Under the pieces are notes generated by a model. It had not been told where the DNA came from, did not search any database, and saw only the letters and a program-made list of their open reading frames with translations. DNA of 64,000 bases from Takakia lepidozioides (lineage: Eukaryota > Plantae > Bryophyta). The translations under genes were made by a program, and so were the position numbers. Below, one piece after another: positions 13,813 to 62,100 of the stretch. How positions within the stretch are numbered: the first letter of the stretch is position 1; each line of letters starts with the position of its first letter. The stretch is taken from assembly GCA_030704615.1 (NCBI GenBank), contig CM060732.1, forward strand, positions 66,836,001-66,900,000. Direction: 5' to 3'.

Positions 13813-15027
13813 TGTCTGGGACATTCCACTCAATCTCTACGCAGATCTTCAACAATGAAATGTAAGTTAGAGAAAACTTACTGGCGCCTTCTTAGGTTTT
13901 GAAATTGGATCCCCTTTTGCAGCTTTCCTCTTCCCTCTCACATCTGCTGGAATTTCTGTCTGCTCTAGGGTTTCTGGACCTTCTCCCGGTTCGGCGTTCC
14001 GCATGCTTCCACCTCCTTCAGTGTCCCTGCGAATCATCTCTGCATCCACAAGCTGATGCACTCTTATCGCCGACTGTGTCACAACCGCTGCCTCAGTCTC
14101 CGTCTGCTCTTGTGAATCAGTCTCCGCGTTCACCTGCTGCCTTGGCCCTGTGTTCTCCAACAAACGACGCCTCGTCATTTGCTCTCTTGCTCTGCGTCTC
14201 TCTCTAAGGGAAGTAAAATAAAGAGACTTTCTTCTCTTTCATATTGTAGAAGGAACCCTCTCCAGCTTGACTACCACTCTCTCTCTAAGCGCGAAAAGTA
14301 GAAAAACGCAGTGACTCCCGATTTCTTGCGGGATTGCCTGCGTTGTTGCTTGTCTCTAGAAGCATCGGATTCCCTCTTGCGTGACCGTTATACATAGTCG
14401 TTCCCTTATTAGTGCACATGCCAGCAATTGGTGTACAGCTGTTCGTATTCAGTTATGGATGTCTGACGTGTGTCGCCCAAAATAAACGGCGTGTTCTTTA
14501 TTAGAACGGTTTCAATATTTAAAAATAACAACGAATCCCATAAATCTTGGCACACAGTCTTACACAAATAAATGTAAATGAACGAGAGTTTGATGACAAA
14601 TTTTGGAATATCATACACGGTCATCCTTGTTAGCCAAACCCCACATTCGTTTCACATTTGGAACTTTCCAGGTGCGCATGATCATTGGATAAAGATACAT
14701 TTACTTAATCTGCAATCCCATCCTCAGATCCTGTGGCATGCTTCCAGGAAGTCGGCTTTGTTATTGGGTTTATTGATGAGGTTCTGATTAACGGTTTAAC
14801 AGCTGCCGACACTGCTCCTAGGGATACTCTGACCACTGGGCCCACAAGAAAAGTAATTAAAATGGACGGCTGCATATCTGGAAAGAATAACATAATATGC
14901 ACAGTCGTTGTCTGAGCTTCCTCCGCCATATTCTCTGCTCATTCTTCAACTGTGTTCTGGAGACATCAGTAAACCGATTTACACTAGATCTGCGATAGCA
15001 AGGTATAAACGTACGCGAGGAAGGAAG

Positions 15028-17335
15028 ATGGCTTCCTCTGAAGCAGAGTTCTTCTTTGACGACAAACCAGTGCCGTTCTCCCAGGAAGTCCTTGACAATG
15101 GATTTGTAATTGTTCTGGAACATGTCTTGGCTACCCGTTTTCAGCTGCAGAATGGCTCCATCTTTTTGGAGAAAGATGTGTACGATCTTAAAGGGAAGTT
15201 GTTGAAATACTCTTTCCAAAACCGTGATGAGACGGCTCATATCAGCCAGTGGAGAGTGCGTCCTGGTCGATACAGAGTACTTGGAGAGCCTCGGCGAAAG
15301 TCCCTTGGGTCATATGTAACGCCCGGGACTGCTGCTTCGGTCGTTGAAGACAAGAGGGAGGTGGTGGTGAAAAAAGAACAGACGTCCTCCACTCCAATCG
15401 TTGAGCTTTCGGATTCTTCCGATGATGACATAAGTGAAATTCCAAATCCAGTCCTTCCTACTGTGGTTGGAGAAGCTGATGAAGAAGAGATTTGTAGTGT
15501 CATTCCAAAATTGCGGGCGATGGGAGGAATGGCTGGATTCAAAAGTGAGTTGCGGGGAATTGATTGGGAATCTTTGAAGCAGGTGCCTGTGAAGTTCTTG
15601 CCGGAGACTTTTGATGGCGATATCCTATTTGAGCTGCCTCCTCCTCCGCGAGTTGGAGGTGTAACAATCATGCATGGAATGGACAAGAAACACGACGGGC
15701 ACCCGTGGTGCAGAACAAAAACATCCAATATTCAGAATGATGACAAGCTTGTTTTCAGGAGGACAGTTTGCAATGGACACCTTAGGTGTGATAATTTGAA
15801 TTGTAGACACTTTCTTCAGTCTGGGGTTCATAATCAAAGCGAATGGGAAGGTCTGGCGGAAAATCCATTTCAGCCTGGGACTGCCCCTCCACCGGCAAAC
15901 ACTTTCGTCTGCAAATTCTGCAAACTTGTGCCATCCTGCTTGGCGCTCTGCGGAGCAAGAATGTACTATGTTGTCCACCGTTTGAAAACAATGCCAAGAG
16001 CTTGTGTGCATTTCGGATTCCATAACCATCCTGTCTCGAAGGGGGATTACAGGGAGAGTGTTGAGACAGTATCGAGGTTGATTAAACAGGAGTTCGGGAG
16101 AAACCCATCCGCAACAACATCTGCAATTGCTCTTGGCGCAAGCAAGTCCTTCTTGGAAAAGCCATATTTTGAGTGAAGGGGATTCTGTGGGGACTAAACT
16201 TGACGGTGCAGCATTGGACCTGGTCATGGATCATTTCTCCACTTTAAGTTCACCTAACATTCGGCATCAGATCAATGCATTGAGAATGGGCTCTGGGATC
16301 AGAGGCTACATAGACAACATTTTGGAATTGAAACGAGTGAGCAAGTACGATTACATCCAGGACAATGTATTCCCAGGTCAAGGTGCCATCAAAGTTTTTC
16401 TTTTCAAAATGTCGACTGTTGGGGAGGGCAGTGGGGTTAGCCTCGTGAGGCGGATGCAGAAGACTAGGGACTTGCATAACTGTTTTCTTATGTTTGATCA
16501 TGTGAAACGAGTGAAGGATTGGACGACAATGGCTTGTCATGTCTACGATCCAGTGTACCAACGAGTTATGACAATTACTAAATTCGAGAAGTGCACTTCA
16601 TCTATATCCAGAGGTGGTGCCCGAACTCCTGCTCCGACTTTCACGGGCTTGATGCGTCCATACGGTCAACCAGAAGCCAAGAACCACAAGTTCTGGTTCT
16701 GCGCAAATGATTGTGCCAGATGTGTGCGTGGAACTGTGCGTCCTTCCGTAGTGATGAAGCCATCTCCTCCAACCGTTTGGCCCGTGAAGGTGAGAACACA
16801 TCTCAGCTTTCAGGAGATTGAAATGCTGGAGGAGGCAGGTTTTTCCCTTGCGAGACAACCCCAACTCCATGCATGTGCTACTACTTCTGCGTCCTCCCGG
16901 GTCCCCCCGACAAATCTTGACTTGTGGCCAACCAAACGAGATGGAAAGCTCGTTCGGCGTTTCCCTCCAACCGTTGAACACTTTGGCAAAGTGAAGTCCG
17001 CAAGAATGCTCCAAGCTCGTGTTGGAAGCACCACGGAAGTACCCGATCCAGGATATGGTCGGGTATTCACAATCATCACTTCCACATCTGCTGTTCATGA
17101 CATGACCTACAATATCACGGTTTCCAATTTCCCCAATTGCACATGTCCTGATTTTGTGAATATGCTATCAACCAGTTTGGGCAAGAGAGGTAAATTCATA
17201 CCCTGCAAACATTTGTATTTCATATTTTTGAAGAGGATGGTTTGCGATCCCAAACGTGACAACTTCATTCACCAGGCCATTATGAGTTTCAACGAGGTCG
17301 ATACTCTTTTGCAGCGGGATACAACACATAGGTAG
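15028..17335 (+). pseudogene. MULE-type transposase (GCM/WRKY-like Zn domain, partial DDE, SWIM), frameshifted and with most of the catalytic core deleted
   Basis: CNGHLRCDNLNC...CKFC...CVHFGFHNHP; FLMFDHVKRVKDWTTMACHVYD (start of the DDE domain); CTCPDF...PCKHL (SWIM). Frameshift at ~16160. The sequence jumps out of the DDE domain at ~16575. Confidence 0.8.
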
Positions 17336-20300
17336 CATCAACTATGCAATGTAGTATGTGGACGACCATGATTTGAAATGTGTAATTCACATCAATTCGT
17401 CGGCTGTACAATGATATGGCCTCCAACTATACGGAGTGAGCTCTGAGTGACAACTTTTAGGTAGTGCACATTTGTCATTGCACCGTTCGAAGTCTACATG
17501 TCTTGCTGTCGCTATGCACTACAATCATCTTTTGAAGATGATCCTAACTCTCATTGTTATTTGAGGAGGGAGGAAGGTCTTCCCATGGCAGCCTTTATGG
17601 CGCACACTTTATGAGGATATTTTTTCGTCCTCGTAATTGTAAAAGTGAAACAAGCATTTGTAATTGCACAATGTTGGATGCTGCAATTGTAGGCCTCAAT
17701 GCTCGTCTTGATTCTATTTAGGCAAGATTCCCTGCATTAATTCCACGGTCATAGGACCATCCACGGTTATAGGCGACGCATGTTAATGCTGACGTGGCAG
17801 ATGACGGACAGTGCCACGTCATCATTTACTGCCACATCAGCATGTTGACATGACGCTCACGCCACGTCAGCGTGTGTGTAGGCTCACGCCACGTCACTCC
17901 TGCGTGAGCGTACGCTCGCGCGCTCACGCCATTGCGTCGTTGAATAAGAGTGGGAATACATGGCCTTGTGTCTAGTGAGGGGCCATTTAGGACTGGACCT
18001 ATAGGTATAACTGGAGAGTTGTGTGGGTTTTTCCCAGGCATTTTATGGTAGTACCCATCAATGAGGCTATGCGAGGTATAGTTTAGTCCTCATTGCCTGG
18101 AGAATTTGACTACATCGGTATAACATCCTACGGTAATTTCCATTATAGACATAGCATTCGGGGAAGACTGAGGAAAACATACAATCACCGTTAAAATAAA
18201 ACATTCCACAAACATATTGAATTTTATTCAACACTCCACAACAAATCCCACAATACCCTCAGGCAGATTGTATTATGCCCAAAAATTCTCCAGACATGCT
18301 AGACACAAACTGTAAAAATGGATGCACATCCACAAACAAGCGCACATTTTAAATCTAATGCTCACGCGATGTGGGGACATCCACTAAAACCTGGGCCCCC
18401 AAAACAACTGCCGTCATACACAATAGAACACATAGAATCCAATACAAACTGTTGTCAATCATCTCCCTAAGGCGGCAAAAGCTAGGTACATCTTATATTT
18501 TTATCCCCGACACAATATCTCTAAAATTGGAGTACATTCATCTACACAACCTCTTCAGTCCATAAATAATTACCCATACTGTATGCGACCCATTAATTGC
18601 AGTAGGCTCCACTCAAAATTAATCATTAATAAAACCCTGAAAGCAAGAGGCTACCCCTCCAGTAAATATAATTTAGCCTCAAATTATAACCCCATATATC
18701 TGCTGCTATCACCCGATTGCTACAGAATCACCCGACTAACCTATTCAGAATGGCCCCTTCACAATAGTCTAAAAACTCAACTCTATAAAACAAAACAAAA
18801 CAAAACAAACATCTCGCTTCATATATTGATACGAGATGCAGCTTGCTGTGTATTTATAAGTACTAGGGTAGCCTGTGCCGTTGGCCCAAGTGTCCAGTGT
18901 CATCTAAGCCCAAGTGTAGGACCTCATATGTCTCCCATTGCGTCTCCTATTTCAAGGCCCAGTGTGACCTCTGGTTGATTGGAGGTTACGTGACTACATT
19001 TTTGTGTCACAGCACGTGTTTTACATGTCGTAGTTTGATTCAATTGTACTTTAGAGATAAAGTTTTATTACAATGATGAAATTATGGGACTCATTCTTAT
19101 GTTTCCAACTACTACAAGTTCTAATCTTTACATTCTCCCCAAGAAATGAAGTTGATTTGTCGAAGTAATGGACTTTAGAAAAGTGCATACGACAGTTCAT
19201 AGTCCATAAAAAAAATATGTTATGGACTTTTTTGCACTCACTATAGACACAATTATGATAAAATGGACTCATATTAATATTGCTCTACTCTTAAAGATAT
19301 TAAAGTCCTATAGAGACCATCAAAAAAGTAAAAGTTCTTACTTCTATATATTATTGTGAGCCTCAAAAATTTGAGTTTTGCCAAAGTACATGAATGCATG
19401 GAAACAAAATAAAACAATTGACTTGCTTCACTAAAAGGTACATTTTATGTAGATGAATAGTAGCTTGAGTCTCGCTATGCAATATAATGGAAATATAAAA
19501 AATAAGACATAAAATAAGAAAATAGAAATAATTCTGTTACTAGGAAAAATAGAAATAATGCCATAGTATCTGTTATTGTCAACTTTAGACGGTCCATATT
19601 TTTGAATCTAGTGACTATAGTTATTTCATAATCATTAAATCAAAATTATAAAAAACCTTGAAACTTATTGAGGCCACCTTGGGACTTTTCTGAGCCACCA
19701 TAGCCTGCAATCACCCTTCTAGGGTAGCATGTGCCATTGGCCCATTTGTGAAGAATTGAAATCTAAGTCCAACTGCAATTTCCTATATATCCCAGTGCGT
19801 CGTCTCCTTTGTCGGTATCTAAGCCCAAGTGCAATATCTTACATATCTAAGTCACGGTTTTTTTTTTTCATTTTGGCTTAGAAGCGTAGATGGCTACAAA
19901 ATTTGAAGGCTAAGTGCAAAGATGGCGATGACATAGATGCTTAGCAAAAAATCAACTGTCTATAAGCTATTTCATTTGCATGCAATATGACGATTTGAGT
20001 ATTTTGTGTATGCATTGCATAGGCGATACAAATAAAAATTGAGGCATAAAGTAGTGGCTACAAGAGGCCACATATTGTTGCAATGTGGCTACAATGCCAT
20101 AATCGAAGTGCATTTGCTGGCACTAGAGCCTAATCAAGTAGCAAAGTGACACCATTGCCTAATGTCAAGAAGCAATGTAGGCATAACAGTCTATTTTAAA
20201 TCTGAAATCTGAAATTTGTTGATCAAGTCTTAAACTGGGCCAGCAAGCATCATGGCCTCAATATCAAATAACAAAATGACACCATAGTCCAATTTGAAGG

Positions 20301-48522: not shown

Positions 48523-49940
48523 CAATACTATATGCCATTGCAGTAGCATATTATGAAACATAAGAGAGAAAACTCCTGCCCAACCCGGCGTAACTAGGAG
48601 CCACTTCACCTTGCAGCTAGTGGCCCTTTTTGGGGGGTGGGCCCTAAATGAAACATAATATGTTTGATCAGGACGTGCATAGCAACACAAGGCTGGAGCC
48701 TGGAATGCCACGCGCCTCATTTCGACTAGGCCAACCCACGTTGGCGGGGCCCCTCACAATCGTGAAGCAATGGCTTCTCCACAGCGCATCGATCCGCTCT
48801 TGGTTGGCAAAGCGGGGCGCCTCTAATTCATTGTCAGTAGCCTCGGATTTGAAGGTTTTTGCAGCTCACGCGTTAAGTTATGTGTGAGAGAGAGCGTAAC
48901 CTGGTTCTTCTAGGATGGGGTGTTTTTTGAAGTATATAGATCATTGTGTGTCTGAAGGATTTATGAGTTTCTGGGTTTGCGATGGGTTATGCGGGGAAGC
49001 AAGTTATCCTTTGTGGGATGATGTCATGTGAATGCCAGTCCTTGGAATCAAATTCAAAATCGCAGTAAATCGCATTGTCAACGACTGTTTGCGAGGACTA
49101 CGATAAGTTTGGACCCAGCTTCATATCATGTGGACTCGAAGACCCTAAGCTGGCTCCTGTGGAAGTGTACATTCAAGGGTATGTCTTAGGCAACTTTCTT
49201 ACGGAGTTGTCATCAGTAAAGCCTCAATTCCCCCTCCCTCGCTCCCTGCGTACCTGAAAGACTCAACTTTTTATCTCTTACTCGTGCTATTAATAACTCG
49301 CAGATCATGTCTAGTCCGGGATAGTGACTAATACAGTGGTGGGTGTGTTAATGCAAACGCCTTGCTCCCTGCATGTTGACTGCTTGAGCCCTGTGAGAGA
49401 GTGTAGACAGTTATACCCAGTGGAGGTCCAGGATCAATGTGAGCTAAATTTACTTCTGTTATGATCTTCTTTTGTTTGCTGTCGTTCTGCAGCATTAGTT
49501 GTATGGAAAGGTTTTATCGATTTGACCCCAAGTTAGGTCACTCTACTGTCTCTCTCTGTGCACGGGTCTTCTTTCTGAGAAGGAACTTGCAGTTACTTGT
49601 GTGCCGTGGGTGGTTCTGAGCCTTTTGTTTTATCGACTATGGAACCAAATTTTCTATTGGTTGGGTGGTACGTCTCTCTGTCTTGGACATAATTTACTTG
49701 ACAATAACCATGAGCTTTCTACCATCGAGAGAGAGGCTGGCAGAGGCATCTTGCAACTCTACTTGCAGTTCTTTGCCGCACCTGCTGTAAGGTTAAGGGT
49801 GTATCCATTTCTGACAGGTTTGATAGGGCCCACCCTCCAAGGGGAGCAGTAGCCGCAAGGCGAAGTGGCTCTTGGTTACGCCAGCTTTGGCCGGAGTCTT
49901 CATCTTCTTCTCTGACAGACTGTTTGAGACTCATACAGCT

Positions 49941-52636
49941 ATGATGGAAGATGGTTCGGGGTCAATGCTCAGCATCAACACAGGCAGCACAGGAAACAAC
50001 GGATTGGTTGCAGAATCAAAAAAGCAAGTTTCCATTTTGGAACCCCTTCTCCCAGACAAACAACAACCAACTGCCGCCAAGTCAGGTTCTAGAAATCATT
50101 CTGCTAGATTCCTGCGGCTCACCCACAGTGCACCAGGGATGAACCAAACCAATGACACCCAGACTCCAGAATTGAAGCTTCAAATTCCAGCTGCCAAAAC
50201 TCCAGCTCCCCTCTGTCATTTCAACAAGGACGGTGGCCTGTCACCACTTTTAACAGCATTATTTGGTCTTGGGATCTATCTGGTGGTAGGCATTGCTTGC
50301 TACTACTTACTGCAGAATGAATTAGTGGGTCCAACAACATCCTCTGTTGTGGACGTCCTCTATATGTGTATCGTGACAATGACGACTGTTGGATATGGAG
50401 ATTTGGTGCCCTCAAGCACTAGAGGAAAGATTTTCACATGTGTTTTTGTCTTTGTGGGGTTTGGTCTCGTTGGAGCACTACTCAGCGGGGCAGCAAATTA
50501 CCTTGTTGAAAAGCAAGAGAGGATTTTGGAGTGGGCAGTACACAAGAGGGAGAATCAGAAGGAGGAATTTCCACTGCAGTCTGATTTACTGGCAGCTCAC
50601 AGCAAGCTAGCAGTGTCAGGAGCCTTGGTCGTAGTTCTGTTTGTCGCCGGAGTTGCCGTCTTGATTTATTCTGAAGGCATGAGCTTTGTTGATGCTTTTT
50701 ATTGTGTGTGCATAACTGTCACTACTCTAGGCTACGGTGACAAGAGCTTCCACACTAGAGGTGGGCGCATTTTTGCAATCTTTTGGATTCTCTCCAGCAC
50801 AGTGTGTGTGGCTCAGTTCTTTCTGTATTTAGCAGAGGCCCAGACTGAAGAGCGCCGACATCATCTTGCCAAGTGGGCATTGACTCGGAGGACTACCTCA
50901 TCAGACTTAGAAGCTGCTAAAATTGATCGAGATCGTGATGTCAGGTTGCTCTCTCTCTCTCTCTCTCTCTCCGTAAAGCAGCACAAATCTCTTTCTTATC
51001 TTCCGTTTAAAGGAGAAATTTTGATAATCTATATTGTTCTACTTTGGATTATCCTTTCTTATACCAGAGTGGAATTTAGGGCTTTGTGTCTTCCACTATC
51101 ACCTATTGCATACGGCTAGGGCATACAGTCGCTTTCCAAACAGCTTGGTTTGCAGTAAATGTCAATGCTGGCACGTGAGCTGCTGCCTTTCTACTATATG
51201 AACAAGGGAGGAATAGCAGAACAATGGGTACTGTCACATCTCCTGACAAGAAGGGACTTTATGGTATCTTCTAGGCACTTTCCTAAGGTACCAGTGATGT
51301 TGACTTCAGCCGTGTTGGAAGTTTCACAGCCCCTTCCTATGCCGACGCTTTGGGTGGTTTTGGGCCAAGTGATCTCCCTTGCATGTCTGTACCGAAGTGG
51401 TTTTTTTCTTTCTGCTATTGGACATGATACGTTCATTTTTTGAAGCTAGGGCCTGCCATTCACCTCAAACAGCCTCCCCACATCATATGCATGTGGTGAT
51501 TTTTAGGACGGGTGCAGGTGAGGGCCACTCTTCTTCTCTGTGATTTCAGACAAGAAATTAAAAAAAAAACTTGTTTTGCAGATATGAGAAAGGCTGCTTA
51601 CCTGCAGTGAGCAACCAGTGTTATGGTGCCACTACTTCTGAGAGGACTTCATGAAAGAATAACCATAAGAGTGGGTTGTCCCCCTCCAGGGATGTAACCT
51701 ATACTAGAGGTTTCCATTGTTAGGTTAACGATATACTGCGGAGTCAATATATATCACACTGAGGTATGTTATCATGGGGACATTTCCAGAACCTAAGCTG
51801 TCCAACCTCTGAGCGCATGATCAAGTTTCTGCAAACCATATATGTGGAAAGTTTGCAAAGACATGGTATTTGAACATAATTTACTGGTTGACAATCTGCA
51901 TTACACAGAGCTATTTCCAACTCTCTTTCATGCTGCAGTATAGCAGTTCATGAAAAGCAATGAAGCATTCTGCCTACCTCTATGGCAAGTCTAATATGGG
52001 AGGGAAACCTGTATGTATGTCATGATTGATCATATACAGGCACACCACCACCTACCATGATCACCTCTATGGATATGGAGTCAGTGTTGAGTCTGGATCA
52101 AGAGGAGATATGAGGCTGTTGTTGTCTATAAATTTTGGATCTAGTCTGGAATAGTGAGATCCTGTCTTGTCAAGTATCTCTCCCACTACCGACTTGAGCC
52201 CCTCACAAAGGTAGTGTCTGTTCCCTGTTTGTTCCGCCCAAACTGGCGTGGGGTCTCTGGCCACAATGCGCAGCAAACAATGTCTTCTGACCACCACCTC
52301 TCCCTCTCTCACACCACGTCCTTTGGGCCTCTGATGGACATAATCTCCCTTCTTTCTTCTTTTCCTCTAATTTTCCACATTCATCATTCCAAGAAAAATG
52401 CCTTAAATCATGCTGCCCATGTGTGTTTTCAATTCCTTTGATTCTAAACAGTGAATTTTGTTGACAGAACTTCGGGACCTGGATGCTGTGCGGCTGAATT
52501 CGTCATATTCAAGCTGAAGGAGCTGGGAAAGATTGATGAGGATGATGTACAGGAGGTGTTAAAAGAGTTTGATTCTCTTGATTATGACGAGTCAGGCCGA
52601 TTGACAGTGTCTGATCTACTCCTCTCCTCAAGCTGA
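49941..52636 (+). CDS. TPK: Two-pore (tandem-pore) K+ channel, TPK/KCO family; exons 49941-50944 and 52468-52636
   Basis: Two pore loops, TMTTVGYGD and TVTTLGYGD; four TM segments; N-terminal RLTHSAP 14-3-3-type site; C-terminal AAEFVIFKLKELGKI and EF-hand DYDESGRLTVSD. Confidence 0.93.
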
Positions 52637-53898
52637 GTAGTATGGCCTTCCTGGGGTCTACTGTGACTGAGAGTGGCATGTAAGTTTATGGTTTGTACAT
52701 ACTCTTAATGTGTGAAGTGACGCAAGATGCTTCTACATGGGCCTGCGCATGTTTGTTACACTACAGAACACGTAGAATGGAGGGAGAAAGGTGTGTCTGG
52801 TTATATTGACAATAGGGAGCTAAGCACACAGTGACACAGAGAAAGGCTTCCTTTCAGTAACATGGGCCGATACAGCAGTAGCTGAGAGACTGGAAGGTGT
52901 TTCTGAACATCAACAGTTCAAACCTCAAGTCATCATTGGAAATCCTAGACCTGGACTAATTTGAACAGGAAACATTTATGCGATTTCTTATTATATCCTA
53001 TTCAGGCAATTTGAAGGGCCAAGGTGCCCTTTCCCTAGAAAGACCCCATCAAGAAAGGACCATCACTTTGATATGTTTGATAAAGTTTGCCCTTGTGAAC
53101 CCAACATGATTTGCATCTGAATCACTGGAAGATGAAGGAAGCTCCACCTTGTAGAAGTAAGATTATATAGGTGCTGCTCTAATGTGCAAACAGCCCATGT
53201 CTTCCAAGGACATTGAATGCCCACACATAAGTTGCAAGGTGTTGCCCATGCATTGTGTAACTCTAAACTTCTTAGTTCTAAGAAATACATAATCCATCTT
53301 CACCAAAACTTGGATCAATCTATGCCACAATTCAAAGTTGATGTTTGAGCTGACAAATGCAAGTATGATGTACTGATGGAGGATGGGACCTGAGTCAGGA
53401 GGGCTAGAGACAATGGAAAGGGTTCAAAATTCCACTACTGCTTACAGCAGGTGAAAGAACCAGCAAATGAGAATACCCACATTCAATTGCCACTATTGAA
53501 TTGGGATTTGCCATAGACAACCATGTACTGCAAATACTGATTCCTAAGTGCATTTGTGTTCTTCTCCGCATAAAAAAATCACATGCAAACTCAAGATGAT
53601 CTCCAGCATTGATTGTATACAAGTCTTACTGCAGAGGTCCATGGAACAAGGGCATGCATCTCCTAGTGACAGTTGACAAATTAACAGGGAACAACATGCC
53701 AGGAAAGCCGCAATCAAGTTGCTGTGCCAAAAAAGAGATTACTAGGTGGTACAAGACTCACCCACATTTGCTATCCATGTGCTAAGGGTTTGCAGAAGGT
53801 AAACAGTTGAAAGTTCAACCCTTCATCTGAAATTGAGACTTGAATTCTGAGTTTGATCAAAGGCGGGCCCCACTTCCCTGGTAAGTATTGAGCAACTC

Positions 53899-56800
53899 TC
53901 ATAAAGCAGATCCCAGAAGCTCTCTCAAAACCTGGGCCCACTTTTTTGTCCGAATCTTCAGCGCCTTTGGAGTGGAGACGAGATTGGCCTTGAATTCAGC
54001 ATCCTAGCCAGATCATGAAAAGAACATGATTGCAACCAAGTCCGCCCAAGGTTTTGGAGATCTCAACAGCATGATGATAATGTTTCACTAGATTTAATGT
54101 TTGCAGATTGCCGATTGACATGAAACCTCTCCCTAATGTGCTGTCCAACAAGAAGTCTATCACACCTCATGTACAAGGCACAACATTGTCTGTTGGCACA
54201 GGGCCAAGGGAGCCAAAATGGGCTCAGCAAATTGTATGTGGAATGAGCAGTTGTCCAACAAATATATGAAAAGAGGGTACTGATTGACATTGCTATTTTC
54301 TTGCAGGGGAATGTTTCAACATACCTTTTTCACTAGATCATCAAAGTGAGTTACAAGAGCCTCCTTCTTACTCATCACTGCCAGGCTGTTGTACCCCAAG
54401 AAGCCAAACTGCTCAAAGACAGACAGCCAGTATCACCAAAGACCAAACCTGAGCAGAGCAGCTTCTATCTCAGTAGAACGTGAAGCTCCAAACAAAAAGA
54501 TTCCCCCAACTTCCATATGTACTAAAAGATCCCTTGACTGGAAAGCAAAAGCATTTTTTGGTGTGATGTGGTACAGGGATTGCAAAATAGAACAACCTTC
54601 CACCACTGTGTTCTAGATACATCGGACCCTTGGTCAGTCCAAACATAGTATTGTCATGTGGCCAAAAGAAGTGTATGCTTTACTCACAAGGGTAGGTTGT
54701 ACACATACCATGATTGTGTCCCACAAGCAGACATTAGGATCGGCCTCATGTCTTGGACCCCTGCATACATGAAGCTCTTCTTAATTCCCCATGTAGTAGC
54801 AAGTTATGAAGAAAATGAGTCATGGGATAGTGACCATGCTCTTTAATTTCCATGCAAAACAAGTGCCCCAATGAATCTCTTTGGAAAAAGGCCAGCTTCA
54901 TACTGCAAAGGCTCAAATTATGGTCATGCTGTTCAAGTGCACATTTGGTAGAGTCTGAAACAAAGTTTCCCTTGCTATACCTTATAAACGAAGTATTCTA
55001 CAGTTTTCTTGGAGTCCAAAACTGTTTGCAGTATCATCAAAACAGCCCATACTTCTCCTATTGAGTGCTTCGCATGACTATTGGTTTAATGCATAGTGTA
55101 AATATTACACATCCCCTGTCCTTGTAACCGTTTTTTACAGGCAATAGCTTGCTTGACGAGGAAATGAATGGTGCCAGTAATTCTGTGTTTTTGGCACAGG
55201 TACGGTGGCGATGCCACATCCATTTTTTGTTGTACTGGTAACTGGAAAGCCACCATGCAGTATAAAGTCACAAAAAATCCCTGTAGTTACACCAAAGAAG
55301 GGTGTGCCCAGAGAATGCTAAGTATTCATACATGTCTGCGGGCAGTAATAATGTGGAGAGGTAAGGGCAATGATATAGCCCCTACCTTTGACCATCTGCA
55401 CACTGCAAGGTTGAAGACACATCGATGCCCTCTCTCTCTGCAATAAGACACCAAGCATCAAAGTCACTGAGTTTGTGCCCCGTACCGGGGCATTCGAAAG
55501 ACTTGATCGCCAAAAACATTCACAGCCAGCGTGACGGAGCGCATAAATTCGTCCTTCATTGTCTGTGCCTCCACCTCCTCAAGAAACCGATGCCTGCCAT
55601 GTCAACTAGTGTGCCCATCAGGATTACAATCGTTATAAAGCTCAAAGCAGAACCCAATTTTTCTTCCCCCTGGAACATCCTAATTCCAGCCATCATCAAC
55701 TGTGAGTGTTGGACTGACCTCTCGTTATTAAGCCAGTTCTTCACTGGCAGATAAAAGTTCTCCAAACCAGTCCGCCTTAATGCAAAGAATCTCAGAATAA
55801 ATTCTCTATCGCGCATCCTGCAAGCCCATAATTCCATAAAATCCCCTCCTTGAATATAGCTGCTGAGACGGAAAAGCAAAATTGGACTTCATAGAAGTCT
55901 TTGTCTCTTCCACAGGAGTGGTGACCTAACTAAGCTAAAGAATAGGAGGAGACATCATCAGTTGACATGGAAATTATACTCTTTTGATCAGAAAGTTAGC
56001 AATATGGTATATCAGCACATCCTTACAAGTCTTTACTAACCCAAATGACTACCTCCAATGATGGGTCAAACCAGCACCTCTTATGTGGAATGTCCTGATG
56101 AAAAACTTTAAGCATATGGGGATGCGATGCCAGTTCATCCAGCAGATCATTGTAACTGCACAAAGCACAGCATTGATTGAATCCGTCAGGGACAAGTGTT
56201 TTTGTCATATAATTTCTGGGTACTAATTGCACACCACGCTTAGGAATGCAAGAGTGTTTACTGCCTATACGAGAGCACCCACTGGAGATCCGTGCACACA
56301 CTGCTGAGCTCTTGGCAAAAGCTTCAGTCTACTGACCATCTTTAGGAAGCTGCTCCAGCTGCTTTGTAACCTCTTATGAGAGAGCTGTAGATTTTTCGTA
56401 ACTTCCTTACTGCTTCTAACCAGTAACCATAAAGTAGGACTGACAGCAGCCAGTAATCCTTACAGTTTTCGTGGGCTAATTTTAGAAATGACACAGACTT
56501 CCAAATGCAAGCCTGCTAGCTGAATGAGCAGACAACTTACCTGCCTTGAAATACACAATTGCGGAGCTCTTGCTCATTAAGCTGCAAAGGAGACATCAGA
56601 GACAAAAAATCATAATCATACAGTACTACCATGCATGCTAACTATGCAATATAACCTTCCCTTGTACGCCTCATTACATTCATCCAACTGACCTGATTGT
56701 GAAGTAGTAGCCTGACTGTAAGTTGCATAGAGCTTAGTCATATCACCTACTGTTTCACCATCCGAAAAGACCAGGGACAGTTGCAGGATACGGACCTGGG

Positions 56801-59184
56801 TGGAGCCCATGTTGAGCCGTTCGAATACCTGCAAGGGGGCATACATTTGCAAGACCGCATCCCAGAAACCAGATCAAAACCTAAAAAAGATGATTGATGT
56901 ATTTCTGGGACAACAACCATTTGCTTGCATGGTACAATGACTGTTCAAAAGAATATCGAAATGTACCGCAAAAACAACCTCATCATCCGAATGGCGAGAA
57001 ATGGTATGCACATTTAGAGCAAAGTCTTGCATCACCTGCCAGAGCTACAACACCTGATCACTCACCCAAGCAAGCTTCCTTTCTTATACACAATTCTTGT
57101 AAGGAGGAAAGTAATGTTCACTAAGATGCTAGAAATTCATCTGCGAAAATGTGTTATTTATCAGCATTGTCAAAGTTGAAATGGAGAACCCACAGTGACT
57201 CACCTCTCTAAGAGATTCATCAACGTCCGCATACTTCATACCATTTAACTAAGAGCACACCATCACAGCCACATCAAGTGGCTCCATCAGTACACTTTCA
57301 GGAGTCAGACAGACACCCTATTAACCCAACCAACAATAGCCTTGCAGATGCAGCAAGGCAGATACATTGGGTGAATTGGTTACTTCGGCAAACCTACCCT
57401 GTCAAGGACCTCCAGCCCCGTCAAGGCAAACTCAGCCCCATCCGGAAACTTTTGGACCTCCATGAATGACCTGCCATGGCCAACTGAATATGCATTTTCA
57501 GCAGCTACTTGGTTGAATGAAGCAAACCCAGGCCCAAAGATTAATGGGCCACACACAAGCCCTCCATGGTGGTGAGTAACGAGAGACTTTTAAAGTTCAC
57601 TATGGCCTTGCCACAAACAGACGAGTTTCACTTACCAAATGCTCGTAAGTCGTTGTTTTCCCTCCGCAACCTCCAGCTGGCCTCTGTAAGATTGCTGTAA
57701 CTTAAAAATTATGCAACACTTGTAACTGCAAGCACACACATCCTGGCTAGTTCCAAGATTGCCACTAAACATAAAAGCCCATGACAACAAACACCAAGAA
57801 TGGCCAACTACTCTTAAAGATTCAAGTGCACCTACAAACTCAGCTTTTTCAATACTGGCAAAAGGTTACTTTGCAATACATCCTCTCAAGTAGACAATGC
57901 TGAAGGCCCTTACTGGCTTTTCTCATGGAAAAACATGGTGGGTAGAGGGATGTTGAGCAGGACTGACTCGATGAGCTTGCTTGCTGTGCGCTTATCCCAA
58001 ACATAGTCACGCTGCTCTATAACCAACAAACTGTTAGCTCGTATCATTTGTGGAAGGTTGAAATCCAGCCAGTGAATGGATCACACACAAAAGCTGAATA
58101 ATAGCAGTTGACATACGCAAGAAAATGGAAGTCCTTCTTTACACAGAAAGCAGAAATAAGGCTTAACAAACCTGGTATGATGGCCGTAGGTCAAGCTTGC
58201 CCCTCCTTATCTTGTCCAGTACAGAGCTCACAGTAAAATCTGCAAAAGCAGTCCACTAGACGTTTTGGCAGTCTGCCAGACTTTGGGGGCATGACTTTTG
58301 GCCATGCAAGAGAGCTCATGTATCCTCAACACTGCACTGACTGTAAGGCATTGATTGTACCTAATCATGTATTGGGAGGCATTACAACAAGGCTCAGTAA
58401 AGTCTGCAATTGTACATAGACAAAACTACTTCACCTCCTCTAACAAAGCCCTCCTAAGTCCAGTTGTCAACCCACGGTTAAACCCTCTTCACTCCCCTCA
58501 GCTGGTGCAATCCCCCGCTCCTGCACGCCCCAAAAGGATCTTTCTCTCTCCCTAAGACAAACACACAAATACAGACTCTAAATTACTCGGAAGAGTGCTA
58601 ATACCAGCTTTACTGATTTGCAAAACACGTTCTCCAGAAACAAGGCGGTGCTCCACACGGTGTCCAGTGTTTTCAAAATTCCCCTGACTCTCATTTTCTT
58701 TGCCTTCTTCGATGGTACTCAATTCTGTTGACAGTGCTGCCACAGTTGTCCTCCACTGCGTCCCTGAGCTCCTATAATTTTTGTCATACATTCCACATCC
58801 TTGACTTCCCCGCAAAACTTTCAGGCTTTTCCGGCAGCCAAAGCATTGTATCGTGCTACATCTAGAGGCAGACGTCACCATACACCTCTTCGAAAATATG
58901 GTCGTGGTACCAGTCTTACTGAACAGCCATGGCAAATGAATGCATTGAATAACTGGCGCTGAACTGGTCCTATCTGATGGGAAGCTGTGCAGAGATAAAT
59001 TCTTGCATTCTGCTGCAAAGTCACATGTTCGGTACATGCAGGGCTCAAATACTGCAGAGGTGCAGTGGCCAGGTAGCAGGGGACCATTTTCTCTCACGCC
59101 TTTCAGTACACTAGTAATAAGAGACGGAAAGCCGCCCTCTGAGCTGTGTCTGCAGACTAGTAGGACACGCAGAAAGGTGTCCAT
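53899..59184 (-). CDS. DUF262 (GmrSD N-terminal / ParB-Srx fold) domain protein, 15 exons, ~526 aa from the first in-frame ATG
   Basis: Exons 59184-58605, 58239-58172, 58011-57914, 57683-57636, 57470-57398, 57248-57204, 57035-56967, 56828-56796, 56581-56541, 56155-56078, 55817-55719, 55593-55486, 54760-54709, 54408-54325 and 54003-53899. All introns are GT-AG and phase-compatible. Motifs LRPSYQRDYVW, SKLIESVLLNIPLP, EVAEGKQRLTSI and VFERLNMGSTQLNEQELRN. The start codon is uncertain (59184, 59037 or 58881). Confidence 0.88.
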
Positions 59185-62100
59185 TCCAACGGTCCACCAT
59201 TGTTGGTAGCCTGTGAATTTGTTCACGATTGTTTGGTGCGAACATGGGGGGAAAGGAAGTCGCCGTCAGTGCCTGTGGCAGACAACCTTCCAAACAGCTT
59301 GGGCCTCCTTGACACCCAGCATCCCAGGGAAAGAGCCCGCACATGAAGTTTGCGAAATGCTCATTCTGATCCTACCGGGGCTTTCTACGGTACTTCAGTA
59401 AGAAATTCTCGTTTGCAACAGAGCAGTTCACTAACAGCAGGGCGGTTCTGGATACTCGCTGCACGCTTGTGCACATATGTATTATCGTGTGAAATCTGGG
59501 CTGCATCTTCTCTGCCGTGACTTCAACAGCAAGAGCGAGACACAAGTGAGCTAGTCTTATTAACACCACCGTTGTAGTTGGATGCTTGGTCTACATAATG
59601 GTCAGCTTCAGCCGGGTGTTCGGTGTTGAGGGAAGGCTAGCCATCTCTTGGCTGCAAAGCTATGTGATTTGTTTTCATTCCCCCTTATTGGGGCAAACGT
59701 TGCTGCTCCCCGAAATTAAACCCAACTGATAAAAGCTTCGCAAACACCCGGCACACAAGGTGCTTGATTCCCCCACTTGTTGCTCAGAGGACGTGAGGAG
59801 CTGTGGAATTGTGCTGGGCTGAGAGGGAGAGAGAGAGAGGGAAGAAAGTAAGAAACTCTACTGTCCACAGAAAGCTCAAAGAGCTTATGCTACAAAAGAA
59901 AAGGATACAAGAAAGATGTGGGGCCACTCAACTGGAAGAAGAAAAAGAAAGAAAGAAAGAAGATCTTTGGAGACGATGCTAGTTGCAAGCTTGAACCAAG
60001 TCATCATGGTATTTCCACTTAGAACACACATCAAATTAGTGGCTACATAATGGCCTCGAAAACATGTTTGCAGAAATAAGGACTGTTGCTTTCAAAACAC
60101 CAAGACCTTCATCAGCATTCTATCAACACTGTGTGTTCGATGGTAACCTAACAAGCCAAGAACCTCTACTGTGGTCAATACTCTACAAAGGGGAGATGGA
60201 AGGGTACTTCTATGAACCTAGCTGTCACTAGTAGATACAAAAGCCAGATTGGAAAGAGTAACAATGCTGCAATCGCCACTTTGTCCAGGCCACCTGCACC
60301 ATCCACTCGTTGGCTGAGGACAGTCCTTGCTCTTGACAAAACCACCATCGCAACTAGTACCCAAGTTGAGCACTATATACAAGCTAAAACATTGGCACAT
60401 AGATACATTTCATTAAGAGCTGGGAAGCATCCTGACACTTAAACTGGAACAGAGCAATGCTAAATGTAACCTGCCCAGTAATTCAAGCTCTCTCTCTCTC
60501 TCTCTCTAAGTTGATCAATGTCACACCAATTAAGATCCCCCCATATGTTTCCAGAAGGACCATACCGAACATTCTTAGACTCTGAAATGTAGTCACTCTT
60601 TGGAAAGCAGGTAAATGGAAATGCAACCACTTCCACTCTGTTTAGGACCATAGAGGCAGTAGAAAGTCCATTACGAGATGATGTGTTTTAAAGGTAGGTC
60701 AGTCTTCATGAAGATGGAGCCAATGAAACTGTAGTTGGAAGGTCTGATGACAATAACCAGAAACCATGGCTATCAGGAAGGGAAAATCCCTCACCTTCGG
60801 TATTGTCATTGTCTGTGTTCTCAAGCAACCAGTCACCCATCAGGCGGAACTTATTAAAAAGCTGCCCATCTGTCTCTTTCTTGCCCTTCTCTCCGGTCAA
60901 CTGCTGCTCTAGTGCCTCCAACACAGTCACAGGCCTGTCACCCCATTCGTGAGTCAGAGCATTCCAACCTTACTACGATTTCATGCGAAAAGTCATGCTG
61001 CAAACCAACAAACGCACCAGAAGACAAGCAATAATGAAGTCATTGAATCCTAAGACATAGAGATGCTAAAGAGACTCCGGAGTGACGCTTTTGCCAGGTA
61101 CTCTCTCCCCATCACCAAGAGTGGAGAAAAATCTGTATGTAGGAGTTCCTCCTTAGCCCGGGATGCATGGAATGCGCTTTTGAGCTAAAAGTTCTCGGAG
61201 GAGACCCATCTCACCGACCCACCGTGGGAACTAAGGCTTCTGACAACGTCAGCTCACCATTGTGATGATCCACCAAACGATTTCACAACCTCCTGCAAAA
61301 GTATCAATGTTGCACTGATTTTGTAACTGTCTTCTCGAGCCCAGAACATCTCCAATTGGGGAGTGTAATGGAAAGTGTACTTTTCAGTAAGGAATTGCAG
61401 TGGACAGTCTACTCAAGTCCACAGTTACTCATACTCGCGACATTACCTGTCTTGAGGAAGCTTTTTGTCTCGGGGAGACCCTCTCACAGCCTTCTTCTCA
61501 ATGCCCAGTTTTCTCTCGAGCTCTGACAGTGTCTCCCTTTCCTCCCCGTTCTCACCCCCTCCCTGCTTTGCTGCCCCGGCTCTCACACAAATACTAGTAG
61601 GATGCAACACTCTGAGTGACTCCGAGGTACACAGGCGGCTTCTTCCTGGGGCAAAAGGAGGACCACGAGAGTATGCAACACCCGCGAGGGTAGTGCACAG
61701 AGATGGCATTGTAGTATTGTACAGCTGCAACACCACCTCCCTCACCCTGTGCGGCCTCTTTTGATCAATGTAACTTAGACAGATAACAAAGAAGCATAGC
61801 TTGCACCAATACTTATCTTTCTGCACTTCAGAGGGCGTCTTTGCTTCTCTCTCTGCTTGATACAACGAGTGATTCAGAAGCATGGAGCAAAAGTGAAAGA
61901 GTGATCTTGCCAGGTAACAAGGCCATCAGGATTACAATCTTCCTGCCGGAGAAGAACCACCACCAACTCTACAATGCTGGTTCTTCCTTTCACAGTTCAG
62001 GATCTCCACATACAAGGAGAGAGACAAAAGGGGTGGGACAAAGTAGGGAACACCATCAAGAGAAACCTTTTTTAGGGTCTCTTTCCCAAAATCCCTTATG

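What the first reader, a model, noticed from the sequence alone, without database searches (positions are those of the whole stretch)
53899..59184. Intact 15-exon plant gene for a bacterial defence-type DUF262 (GmrSD-family) protein, invisible in the ORF track
Seen: splicing 15 small GT-AG exons yields an uninterrupted frame with the three DUF262 signatures (YQRxYVW, DGQQR-like EGKQRL, FxRLNxG). A long Ser/Thr/Cys/Arg-rich N-terminal extension resembles an organellar transit peptide, and no HNH/DUF1524 nuclease follows. Established: DUF262 is the ParB/Srx-fold NTP-binding domain of modification-dependent restriction systems (GmrSD, SspE). Inference: an old bacterial acquisition was domesticated, possibly acting on plastid or mitochondrial DNA or sensing modified DNA. 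I know of no characterised land-plant member.
Basis: partly seen in the sequence, partly recalled or inferred. Interest (0 to 1): 0.8.

Follow-up and report, generated by a model that had tools for sequence, protein, structure and literature searches.

The report
Nuclease-less DUF262 gene in a plant
This is a real, expressed, 15-exon plant gene whose protein descends from a bacterial DNA-sensing restriction enzyme but has lost its nuclease; the same uncharacterised gene occurs in green algae, liverworts and ferns, and no seed-plant copy turned up.

Summary
A minus-strand gene has its CDS at 59184..53899, exactly as reported.

- **Transcripts:** A 1942-nt spliced transcript contig matches the window without a mismatch and confirms 13 GT-AG introns.
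- **Exon count:** The Marchantia ortholog Mp5g12430 has the same intron positions and nine identical internal exon sizes.
- **Caveat:** Both available transcript assemblies skip the conserved 45-nt exon and shorten or skip the next one, in frame, inside the domain core.
- **Protein:** It has an unconserved 188-aa N-terminal extension, a ParB-DUF262 domain and a helical ParBDB domain. This matches NsnA and the first ~420 residues of BrxU. It ends exactly where its bacterial sister proteins (DUF262-ParBDB-HNH, many of them cyanobacterial) begin their HNH nuclease.
- **Evolution:** Green-lineage homologs form one clade (100/100) that tracks species phylogeny, from Mamiellophyceae, Cymbomonas and Mesostigma to Chara, Spirogloea, liverworts and ferns. 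No named seed-plant or moss hit and no paper on it were found.
- **Function:** This part is inferred. It is probably an NTP-regulated DNA-binding or sensing protein without its own nuclease, possibly in an organelle.
- **Oddity:** The window copy carries EGKQR where relatives have DGxQR.

The parts
53623..59326 (-). Transcribed span of the gene, as covered by the 1942-nt spliced contig of run X1.
   Evidence: table 8: the pieces carry 0 other letters. The exon chain was rebuilt.
53899..59184 (-). Coding region, from the ATG at 59184 to a stop whose last base is 53899. The canonical 15-exon form gives 526 aa; the X1 isoform gives 507 aa.
59185..59326 (-). 5' UTR of 142 nt, containing three upstream ATGs.
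58605..59184 (-). Coding part of exon 1. It encodes the unconserved N-terminal extension (aa 1-193): a presequence-like, Ser/Thr/Cys/Arg-rich part followed by an acidic linker.
   Evidence: Every eukaryotic ortholog has an unconserved extension of 88-318 aa; the bacterial relatives have none.
58172..58239 (-). Exon 2 (68 nt): start of the DUF262 domain, ...DFTVSSVLDKIRRGKLDLRPSYQ.
   Evidence: Joint. Marchantia has the same exon size.
57914..58011 (-). Exon 3 (98 nt): motif I (Q)RDYVW plus the helix KLIESVLLNIPLP.
   Evidence: (Pfam PF03235, E 4.1e-7).
57636..57683 (-). Exon 4 (48 nt): motif II, here EGKQR where 99% of 120 relatives have D in DGxQR.
57398..57470 (-). Exon 5 (73 nt).
57204..57248 (-). 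Exon 6: a conserved 45-nt in-frame exon (LNGMKYADVDESLRE), flanked by AG and GTGAGT. Both transcript assemblies skip it.
   Evidence: Marchantia has a 45-nt exon at the same place. All orthologs carry these residues, 11 of 15 identical to Marchantia. No contig depth over it (table 2).
56967..57035 (-). Exon 7, 69 nt in the canonical form. The X1 transcript uses a donor 12 nt upstream (exon 56979-57035, 57 nt), which drops VVFA. The X2 contig skips the whole exon.
56796..56828 (-). Exon 8 (33 nt): motif III, VFERLNMGSTQ.
56541..56581 (-). Exon 9 (41 nt): LNEQELRNCVFQG, the end of the Pfam DUF262 match.
56078..56155 (-). Exon 10 (78 nt): start of the helical ParBDB-like domain.
55719..55817 (-). 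Exon 11 (99 nt; Marchantia has 105).
55486..55593 (-). Exon 12 (108 nt).
54709..54760 (-). Exon 13 (52 nt).
54325..54408 (-). Exon 14 (84 nt; Marchantia has 87).
53623..54003 (-). Exon 15: the last 34 codons, the stop at 53899-53901, and a 3' UTR of about 276 nt. No nuclease domain follows.

Best explanation
**Shown.** This is an expressed nuclear gene of a land plant. Its protein is sister to the liverwort proteins, and a neighbouring K+ channel is streptophyte-type. It is the ortholog of Marchantia polymorpha Mp5g12430 and Chara braunii CBR_g17162.

The protein has two folded domains. The first is a ParB/Srx-fold ParB-DUF262 NTP-binding domain with motifs QRxxxW, (D/E)GxQR and FxxxN. The second is an all-helical ParBDB-type domain. 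This is the architecture of the Menshen sensor NsnA and of the first ~420 residues of the type IV restriction enzyme BrxU.

Its nearest bacterial relatives are single-gene DUF262-ParBDB-HNH proteins, many of them cyanobacterial. The eukaryotic proteins stop exactly where that HNH nuclease begins. They carry instead an unconserved N-terminal extension encoded by exon 1.

The gene entered the green lineage once, before chlorophytes and streptophytes split. It gained 14 introns and has been inherited vertically since.

**Inferred.** The protein no longer cuts DNA. It most likely binds DNA through the DUF262/ParBDB groove, under the control of NTP binding and hydrolysis at motif II, as SspE, BrxU and ParB do. 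It would then act as a DNA-state sensor or organiser rather than a restriction enzyme.

The basic, Ser/Thr/Ala-rich, acid-poor N-termini of nearly all orthologs, each followed by an acidic linker, suggest import into plastids or mitochondria. The substrate would then be organelle DNA.

In this species the canonical 526-aa form is encoded intact. The transcripts assembled so far are in-frame exon-skipped forms.
For: - **Transcripts and frame:**
- **Orthology:** blastp gives 77-78% identity to the liverwort proteins over aa 176-521. Nine consecutive internal exon sizes are identical to Marchantia, and all 14 intron positions are shared.
- **Family:** PF03235 hits the window exon and scores 106.7 bits on the ortholog. 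PADLOC's NsnA profile matches the ortholog at E 1.1e-81 over profile positions 34-359 of 385.
- **Fold:** the AlphaFold2 model of the ortholog has pLDDT 91.4 and pTM 0.85. Its best structural matches are BrxU 7p9k (Z 9.6; 279 residues; model 25-359 against chain 1-418), SspE (Z 7.8) and ParB/Noc/Srx (Z 5-6).
- **Nuclease loss:** the 16-sequence alignment runs end to end, with a 55-aa HNH tail present only in the bacterial rows. Pfam finds HNH only in the bacterial proteins.
- **Tree:** the green-lineage clade has 100/100 support. Its internal order is Chara, then Spirogloea, then (window + liverworts) and (ferns). Its sister is the DUF262-HNH clade, with 98/93 support for the union.
- **Bacterial relatives:** seven of the eight best loci among GTDB species genomes are cyanobacterial. 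All named next-tier hits are cyanobacterial.
- **N-termini:**
- **Constraint:** the skipped 45-nt exon still encodes 11 of 15 residues identical to Marchantia. Only 4 of 68 columns conserved at 90% or more differ in the window.
- **Mechanism by analogy:** the roles of the DUF262 motifs and the ParBDB domain are described in PMC12065111, section 13.
Against: - No biochemical or localisation data exist for any eukaryotic member.
- No targeting predictor could be run. The window's own first 60 residues are less presequence-like than its relatives': 8-10% acidic and Cys-rich.
- Motif II, the predicted nucleotide centre, reads EGKQR here. Three further highly conserved columns also differ, whereas the liverworts and Chara differ at none.
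- Both transcript assemblies lack conserved core residues: 19 aa in X1 and 38 aa in X2. The canonical mRNA has therefore not been seen in this species.
- A specifically cyanobacterial (endosymbiont) origin is not supported. Joining the eukaryotes with the sampled cyanobacterial subclade costs 22 lnL units, with AU p = 0.042.
- The fold was predicted for the Marchantia ortholog, not for the window protein.
Confidence: 0.6

Rival explanations
1. The protein keeps an immune role in the nucleus or cytoplasm. It would sense foreign or abnormally modified DNA, from giant viruses or transposons, and signal to a separately encoded effector. Menshen NsnA does this with NsnB and NsnC. On this reading the N-terminal extension is a disordered regulatory region, not a transit peptide.
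For: - The best profile match is the defence sensor NsnA, followed by PD-T4-2_A, SspE and HEC-05/06.
- The structural neighbours BrxU and SspE are phage-defence proteins.
- Many homologs come from marine picoalgae of the Mamiellophyceae clade. From general knowledge, these algae are heavily infected by large DNA viruses.
- The window's own N-terminus is not a textbook presequence.
Against: - Inheritance is vertical, and at most two near-identical copies were seen in any one species.
- Conservation is high: about 50% identity between chlorophytes and streptophytes, and 77% between the window and liverworts, with 17 invariant and 51 further columns at least 90% conserved among 120 sequences. This is unlike fast-evolving immune genes.
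- The closest bacterial genes have no NsnB or NsnC neighbours.
- Presequence-like N-termini recur in almost all orthologs even though their sequences are not conserved.
Confidence: 0.2
2. In this particular species the gene is drifting towards loss of function. The ORF is still open, but the mRNA made is mis-spliced within the domain core and the nucleotide-binding motif is altered.
For: - Both transcript assemblies, from two studies, skip the conserved 45-nt exon. One uses a donor 12 nt upstream and the other skips the next exon as well.
- The window differs at 4 of 68 highly conserved columns, including D to E in DGxQR. Liverworts and Chara differ at none.
- The terminal branch is 0.26, against 0.05-0.11 for the liverworts.
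- The family appears to have been lost repeatedly: no named seed-plant, moss or lycophyte hit.
Against: - All 15 exons are open and all 28 splice dinucleotides are canonical.
- The skipped exon keeps 11 of 15 residues identical to Marchantia, about the same as the protein-wide 77%. A long-unused exon should not do this.
- The skips are all in frame.
- Contigs drop rare variants and depth was only 7-16, so a minor canonical isoform could easily be missed.
- The longer branch may simply reflect a deeper lineage split.
Confidence: 0.15
3. The region is bacterial contamination, or a very recent transfer, that only looks like a gene.
For: The domain is overwhelmingly bacterial.
Against: - It has thirteen transcript-confirmed GT-AG introns.
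- Its intron positions are shared with Marchantia.
- It sits between eukaryotic genes: a streptophyte-type K+ channel and transposons.
- It nests inside a eukaryotic clade with 100/100 support.
Confidence: 0.01

Closest known systems
Marchantia polymorpha MPTK1_5g12430 (Mp5g12430), with the Riccia sorocarpa, Calypogeia fissa, Adiantum nelumboides, Chara braunii CBR_g17162 and Spirogloea muscicola proteins. All are uncharacterised 'hypothetical' or 'GmrSD N-terminal domain-containing' proteins.
   Same: - They are orthologs: 77-78% identity with the liverworts and 62% with Chara across both domains.
- The 15-exon structure is the same in Marchantia.
- The architecture is the same: an extension, then DUF262, then a helical domain, with no nuclease.
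   Different: - The window's N-terminal extension is longer (188 aa against 116 in Marchantia) and unrelated in sequence.
- It has EGKQR instead of DGKQR, and FAVFERLN instead of FEVFERLN.
- Its observed transcripts skip the 45-nt exon.
Bacterial single-gene DUF262-ParBDB-HNH proteins, for example Phormidium sp. LEGE 05292 (P0246), Nostoc, Leptolyngbya, Halomicronema and Sinorhizobium medicae. They are annotated as DUF262 or McrA-like restriction endonucleases.
   Same: - They are the sister clade in the tree.
- They share 36-46% identity and align end to end over the DUF262 and helical domains, with all three motifs.
   Different: - The bacterial proteins carry a C-terminal HNH nuclease of about 55 aa (PF01844) and have no N-terminal extension.
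- The plant and algal proteins lack the HNH, have an extension, and have introns.
NsnA, the sensor subunit of the Menshen (NsnABC) anti-phage system (PMC12065111)
   Same: - NsnA is the best defence-profile match for the ortholog: E 1.1e-81 with near full-length coverage.
- It has the same two-domain ParB-DUF262 + ParBDB architecture without a nuclease of its own.
   Different: - NsnA works with an adjacent ABC ATPase (NsnB) and an effector (NsnC).
- The closest bacterial relatives of the plant protein lack such neighbours, and no partners are known in plants.
- The profile match therefore shows a shared architecture, not membership of a Menshen system.
GmrSD/BrxU (PDB 7p9k) and SspE (PDB 6jiv), DNA-modification-sensing nucleases (GmrSD/BrxU are type IV restriction enzymes)
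   Same: - They share the ParB/Srx-fold DUF262 NTPase domain followed by the helical DNA-binding domain. BrxU gives Z 9.6 over its residues 1-418, and SspE gives Z 7.8.
- They share motifs I-III.
   Different: - There is no DUF1524/HNH nuclease domain in the plant protein.
- Sequence identity is only 12-23%.
- The plant protein is eukaryotic, intron-containing and vertically inherited.
Canonical ParB/Noc CTPase clamps, and sulfiredoxin (the one well-known eukaryotic ParB-fold protein)
   Same: They share the core ParB/Srx fold of the N-terminal domain, at Z 5-6.
   Different: - The plant protein has no HTH or C-terminal dimerisation domain, no ParA-binding motif, and no Srx catalytic context.
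- The PNAS 2025 survey of the ParB-CTPase fold searched with PF02195 and TIGR00180 and names Srx as the main eukaryotic representative. It does not mention DUF262 proteins.

Membership tests
Pfam PF03235 (GmrSD_N / DUF262; ParB-DUF262) | Profile HMM match above the gathering score (33.2 bits). | tested here: met
   A single exon of the window already scores 30.7 bits, E 4.1e-7. The spliced protein could not be submitted because it has no reference. It is 77% identical over the whole domain to P0154, which scores 106.7 bits over profile positions 2-197 of 199.
Pfam PF03235 (GmrSD_N / DUF262; ParB-DUF262) | Motif I, QRxxxW. | tested here: met
   The window has YQRDYVW, spanning exons 2 and 3.
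Pfam PF03235 (GmrSD_N / DUF262; ParB-DUF262) | Motif II, DGxQR (the predicted nucleotide-binding centre). | tested here: inconclusive
   The window has EGKQR. G, Q and R are kept, but the Asp, which is conserved in 99% of 120 relatives, is Glu here.
Pfam PF03235 (GmrSD_N / DUF262; ParB-DUF262) | Motif III, FxxxN. | tested here: met
   FERLN in exon 8.
GmrSD / BrxU / SspE modification-dependent restriction nucleases | A C-terminal DUF1524 or HNH nuclease domain fused to (or paired with) DUF262. | tested here: not met
   The ORF ends at alignment column ~886, where the bacterial HNH tail (to column 955) begins. No nuclease Pfam hit was found in the orthologs or in the window's exon pieces. No HNH remnant lies downstream.
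GmrSD / BrxU / SspE modification-dependent restriction nucleases | A DUF262 domain plus a middle helical DNA-binding domain with the BrxU/SspE fold. | tested here: met
   Tested on the Marchantia ortholog's model. BrxU 7p9k gives Z 9.6 over 279 aligned residues (chain 1-418). SspE gives Z 7.8.
Menshen system, NsnA subunit | ParB-DUF262 + ParBDB two-domain protein matching the NsnA profile. | tested here: met
   PADLOC PDLC03877 NsnA gives E 1.1e-81 over profile positions 34-359 of 385 for P0154. The architecture follows PMC12065111.
Menshen system, NsnA subunit | Genetic association with an NsnB ABC ATPase (AAA_15/DUF3696) and an NsnC effector. | tested here: not met
   The closest bacterial loci (L001, L005, L006, L008) have housekeeping, restriction-modification or recombinase neighbours, with no NsnB or NsnC. 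Operon context does not apply to the plant gene, and whether plants encode such partners elsewhere was not tested.
Canonical ParB (chromosome or plasmid partition CTPase clamp) | An HTH parS-binding domain, a C-terminal dimerisation domain and a ParA partner. | tested here: not met
   Only the N-terminal fold matches, at Z 5-6 over about 95 residues. There is no ParB or HTH Pfam hit. A ParA partner was not testable.
Organelle-targeted nuclear-encoded protein | A cleavable N-terminal transit peptide or presequence. | not testable with these tools
   Only composition could be examined. Orthologs' first 50 residues are mostly 0-10% acidic (Spirogloea P0002: 14%), 8-28% basic and 18-56% Ser/Thr/Ala, and are followed by an acidic stretch. 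The window's own N-terminus is less typical. Neither TargetP nor an experiment was available.

The most novel reading that the evidence does not exclude
The green lineage kept, for about a billion years, the sensor half of a bacterial DUF262-HNH restriction enzyme. It may use it as an NTP-switched DNA clamp or sensor on plastid or mitochondrial nucleoids. That would make it the first ParB-superfamily DNA-handling protein of eukaryotic organelles. The function would have become dispensable in seed plants, and in this species it may be tuned by skipping of a conserved 45-nt exon.
Probability: 0.3. Interest if true: 0.75.

Novelty: new variant of a known kind. Interest (0 to 1): 0.55.

Why it matters
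DUF262 proteins are known only as sensors in bacterial anti-phage systems: GmrSD/BrxU, SspE, Menshen and PD-T4-2. Here is a eukaryotic branch that has been nuclease-free, intron-rich, vertically inherited and strongly conserved since before green algae and land plants diverged.

No function has been assigned to it and no paper on it was found. It offers a clean case of a restriction-enzyme sensor domain reused by a host.

It is directly testable in Marchantia, which has an ortholog with the same exon structure. If it acts on organelle DNA, it would add a new kind of player to plastid or mitochondrial genome maintenance in non-seed plants.

For this window the practical result is a corrected, transcript-backed gene model and a flagged splicing oddity.

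Tried and rejected
- **Single-exon family scans.** Pfam scans of 20 stop-free pieces gave only one hit. Exons of 11-36 codons are too short, so the blanks mean nothing.
- **Single-exon PDB search.** A sequence search of the PDB with the 33-aa exon found nothing. The fold search on the ortholog's model was needed instead.
- **The spliced protein as a query.** The 507/526-aa protein has no reference, so it could not go to Pfam, the protein databases or AlphaFold. I worked through exon references, local BLAST/MAFFT in scripts, and the 77%-identical Marchantia ortholog as a proxy.
- **Names for bacterial relatives.** Cluster look-up returned no organism names. The scan of GTDB species genomes supplied them.
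- **A specifically cyanobacterial donor.** This was considered and not supported: AU p = 0.042 against eukaryotes plus the sampled cyanobacterial subclade. The eukaryotes are sister to the whole DUF262-HNH clade.
- **Membership of a Menshen operon.** Rejected for the nearest bacterial genes.
- **A degenerate HNH downstream of the stop codon.** Rejected. The best tblastn E was 2.2, and the translation there is unrelated.
- **A link to the ParB/Srx-bearing Mutator-like element noted earlier at 9219-17942.** No sequence similarity was found.
- **Species identity.** It could not be established. The scan's notes hold nothing on it, and its proteins are not in the searched databases.

Full report

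Yes. The gene lies on the minus strand. One search for public runs returned two runs of one organism, from two studies, that hold part of the stretch. When these were laid on 53650-59450, a 1942-nt contig of run X1 covered 53623-59326 in 14 pieces with no mismatches. It had 13 joints, every one of them CT..AC on the + strand, which is GT..AG for a minus-strand gene.

Joining the pieces gives a single ORF of 507 aa. The runs are only guessed to be RNA, but a contig that lacks 13 canonical introns can only come from spliced RNA.

One exon alone (piece 57913-58080) hits Pfam PF03235 GmrSD_N at E 4.1e-7. The other exons are too short to score on their own.

**2. Fourteen or fifteen exons?**

A phmmer search of the 33-residue exon 3 against 1.84 billion representatives found full-length relatives. 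Aligning them showed that every homolog carries two segments missing from the transcript-derived protein. One is 15 residues long (LNGxKYxDLxxSxxE) and the other is 4 residues long (VVFE).

Both segments are encoded in the window. The first is a 45-nt exon at 57204-57248, with acceptor ..ctcttAG and donor GTGAGT. The second depends on a donor 12 nt downstream of the one used in X1, which gives exon 56967-57035. With both included, the gene has 15 exons and encodes 526 aa.

I threaded the Marchantia protein exactly onto its own locus. This gave 15 coding exons with internal sizes 68, 98, 48, 73, 45, 69, 33, 41, 78, 105, 108, 52 and 87. The window has 68, 98, 48, 73, 45, 69, 33, 41, 78, 99, 108, 52 and 84. 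The 15-exon structure is therefore ancestral.

The X1 transcript skips the 45-nt exon and uses the upstream donor. The X2 contig also skips the 57/69-nt exon. All these events are in frame, and all remove conserved core residues.

On the ortholog's model, the skipped exon codes for a loop, two short helices and the start of helix 134-142. The 4 dropped residues are the first turn of the helix that carries motif III. The skipped exon still encodes 11 of 15 residues identical to Marchantia, about the protein-wide level. I therefore think it is in use, and that the low-depth contigs (7-16x) show only the commonest isoform of those samples. This remains an open point.

**3. What is the protein?**

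The window protein is 77-78% identical over residues 176-521 to three liverwort proteins: Calypogeia, Marchantia Mp5g12430 and Riccia. It is 62% identical to proteins of the fern Adiantum and of Chara braunii, and 58% identical to Spirogloea.

All of these carry PF03235 as their only Pfam domain. Marchantia scores 106.7 bits against a cutoff of 33.2.

An AlphaFold2 model of Marchantia residues 95-456, built with a 120-sequence alignment, is confident (pLDDT 91.4, pTM 0.85). It shows an alpha/beta N-terminal domain followed by an all-helical domain. Its structural neighbours are:

- BrxU: Foldseek probability 1.00; VIA-align Z 9.6; 279 residues aligned to chain residues 1-418, which is everything before BrxU's nuclease.
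- SspE: Z 7.8.
- ParB, Noc, KorB and sulfiredoxin: Z 5-6, over the N-terminal domain only.

Among defence-system profiles, the best match by far is NsnA of the Menshen system, at E 1.1e-81 over nearly the full length. NsnA has been described as ParB-DUF262 plus a 'ParBDB' helical DNA-binding domain, and is proposed to be the DNA sensor of that system (PMC12065111).

The plant protein therefore has the NsnA/BrxU sensor architecture and no nuclease.

**4. Where did it come from?**

The next tier of database hits, at 38-46% identity, consists of bacterial proteins of about 450 aa with PF03235 plus a C-terminal HNH, PF01844. In a 16-sequence alignment they match the eukaryotic proteins end to end. 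The bacterial rows then continue for about 55 residues of CxxC...DH...N...H..CN, and the eukaryotic rows stop just before that point. The eukaryotic rows alone have N-terminal extensions.

A scan of one genome per bacterial species gave eight close loci at 36-41% identity. Seven were cyanobacterial: Leptolyngbya, Halomicronema, Nostoc, Oscillatoria and others. Every named hit in the next tier is also cyanobacterial, apart from one Sinorhizobium protein.

A maximum-likelihood tree was built from 64 sequences and 375 columns under LG+C20. It puts all green-lineage sequences in one clade with 100/100 support. Inside that clade the streptophyte order follows species phylogeny: Chara, then Spirogloea, then (window + liverworts) and (a Logan transcript + ferns). 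Mesostigma and a chlorophyte group are also inside, the latter comprising Mamiellaceae sp. RCC2288 and many marine metagenome proteins. Cymbomonas also has a homolog.

The sister of the green-lineage clade is the DUF262-HNH clade, with 98/93 support for the union. The cyanobacteria are nested within that sister clade. Forcing the eukaryotes together with that cyanobacterial subclade is marginally rejected (AU p = 0.042).

The reading is as follows. There was one ancient acquisition, before the chlorophyte/streptophyte split, from a bacterium carrying a DUF262-ParBDB-HNH gene. A plastid-ancestor source is possible but not shown. The HNH was then lost, and introns and an N-terminal extension were gained.

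The nearest cyanobacterial genes stand alone among housekeeping genes (GUN4, Fe-ADH, SDR, Dus). One proteobacterial copy sits beside an Eco57I-type methylase and a serine recombinase. None has NsnB or NsnC neighbours. The ancestor was therefore a single-gene enzyme, not a Menshen operon.

No seed-plant, moss, lycophyte or non-green eukaryote appeared by name in three top-120 lists, although such orthologs would be expected to outrank the 50%-identical algal hits. This points to repeated loss. It rests on absence from lists that name only some of their hits.

**5. How does it most likely work?**

- **Shown:** the architecture, the conserved motifs, the absence of a nuclease and the expression.
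- **Known for relatives (PMC12065111):** motif II contacts the beta and gamma phosphates of a bound NTP. In SspE and GmrSD/BrxU, DUF262 senses DNA state and its NTPase activity controls the attached nuclease. The helical ParBDB domain is needed for DNA binding in SspE.
- **Inferred:** the plant protein binds DNA in an NTP-controlled way but cannot cut it. It would act as a sensor, clamp or organiser.

Its slow, vertical evolution argues for a housekeeping role rather than an arms-race role. At most two near-identical copies were seen in any one species. Of 120 aligned sequences, 68 columns are at least 90% conserved, 17 of them invariant.

All 24 N-termini examined, the window's included, carry an unconserved extension of 88-318 aa. 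The first 50 residues are typically basic, rich in Ser, Thr and Ala, and nearly free of acidic residues, and they are followed by an acidic stretch. The chlorophyte sequences show this most clearly.

This is the classic look of plastid or mitochondrial presequences, so organelle DNA is my preferred substrate. No predictor could be run, however, and the window's own first 60 residues are atypical: Cys-rich and 8-10% acidic. I put the organelle part at roughly even odds.

**6. Oddities of this copy.**

The window differs at 4 of the 68 highly conserved columns: V to A and D to E in EVVDGKQR, one L to V, and E to A in FEVFERLN. Liverworts and Chara differ at none. Its terminal branch is 0.26, against 0.05-0.11 for the liverworts.

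Taken with the exon-skipped transcripts, this leaves about a 15% chance that the gene is losing function in this species. Against that, all 15 exons are open, all splice sites are canonical, and the skipped exon is conserved.

**7. Novelty.**

Five full-text searches found no paper on plant or algal DUF262 proteins. They covered DUF262 with plants, GmrSD with ParB and eukaryotes, GmrSD with streptophyte terms, PF03235 with Viridiplantae and chloroplast, and the gene identifiers.

- The 2015 GmrSD phylogenomics paper counts three eukaryotic genomes without discussing them.
- The 2025 survey of the ParB-CTPase fold searched with other profiles and names sulfiredoxin as the main eukaryotic representative.
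- The Menshen paper discusses no eukaryotic homologs; its only uses of the word are in two reference titles.

Orthologs are already in databases under automatic names, so the gene is not new to sequence space. The eukaryotic, nuclease-less, extension-bearing branch is an undescribed variant of a known kind. I score interest at 0.55. It is a solid, testable lead with a model-plant ortholog, but the function is still inferred.

**8. Limits.**

- The spliced protein itself could not be submitted to the database, Pfam or structure tools. Conclusions about its fold rest on the Marchantia ortholog.
- The species of the window was not identified. The protein tree and a neighbouring streptophyte-type two-pore K+ channel place it among land plants, nearest the liverworts.

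Noticed in passing
window 56700-57500 (exons 57204-57248 and 56967-57035): Both transcript assemblies skip the conserved 45-nt exon. X1 uses a donor 12 nt upstream, and X2 also skips the whole next exon. All events are in frame and lie inside the DUF262 core. All orthologs, including transcript-derived ones, keep these residues.
   Followed up: partly
window 55832-55893 (inside intron 55818-56077): Short, high-depth contigs (145-153 nt, 4-5 mismatches, opposite strand) from both runs lie here and run on into unlike sequence at 55893. This is probably a copy of a dispersed, transcribed repeat.
   Followed up: no
window 59185-59326 (minus strand): The 142-nt 5' UTR of the gene contains three upstream ATGs. 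The one nearest the main ATG is out of frame with it; the frames of the other two were not checked.
   Followed up: no
window 49872-51119 (+): An intronless 415-aa ORF for a two-pore K+ channel (Ion_trans_2, E 2.3e-32). Its nearest Atlas clusters are streptophyte.
   Followed up: partly
window 70-906 (-): An ORF fragment matches C-5 cytosine DNA methyltransferase (PF00145, E 5e-13) at the edge of the window.
   Followed up: no
window 14908-17335 (+): Two long ORFs lie inside the Mutator-like element noted earlier (s1-447714); one has a weak SWIM zinc-finger hit. They show no sequence similarity to the DUF262 gene.
   Followed up: partly
L001, L002, L003, L005, L008 (cyanobacterial loci): In one cyanobacterial subclade the C-terminal tail reads CWKPI..DDA.(I/L)A(H/R)..(D/N)YWR...(I/L)P(E/K)NARLDHRFCH instead of the canonical ..DDAE(V/I)DH..HYWRGG...H(R)(Y/F)CN. 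The one locus of this subclade that was scanned (L008) has no HNH Pfam hit. The genes sit among housekeeping genes, so the nuclease may be altered there too.
   Followed up: partly
L006 (proteobacterial MAG): The DUF262-HNH gene lies next to a 1296-aa Eco57I/MmeI-type methylase with a Schlafen AlbA_2 domain and a large serine recombinase. This is a defence-island or mobile-element context.
   Followed up: no
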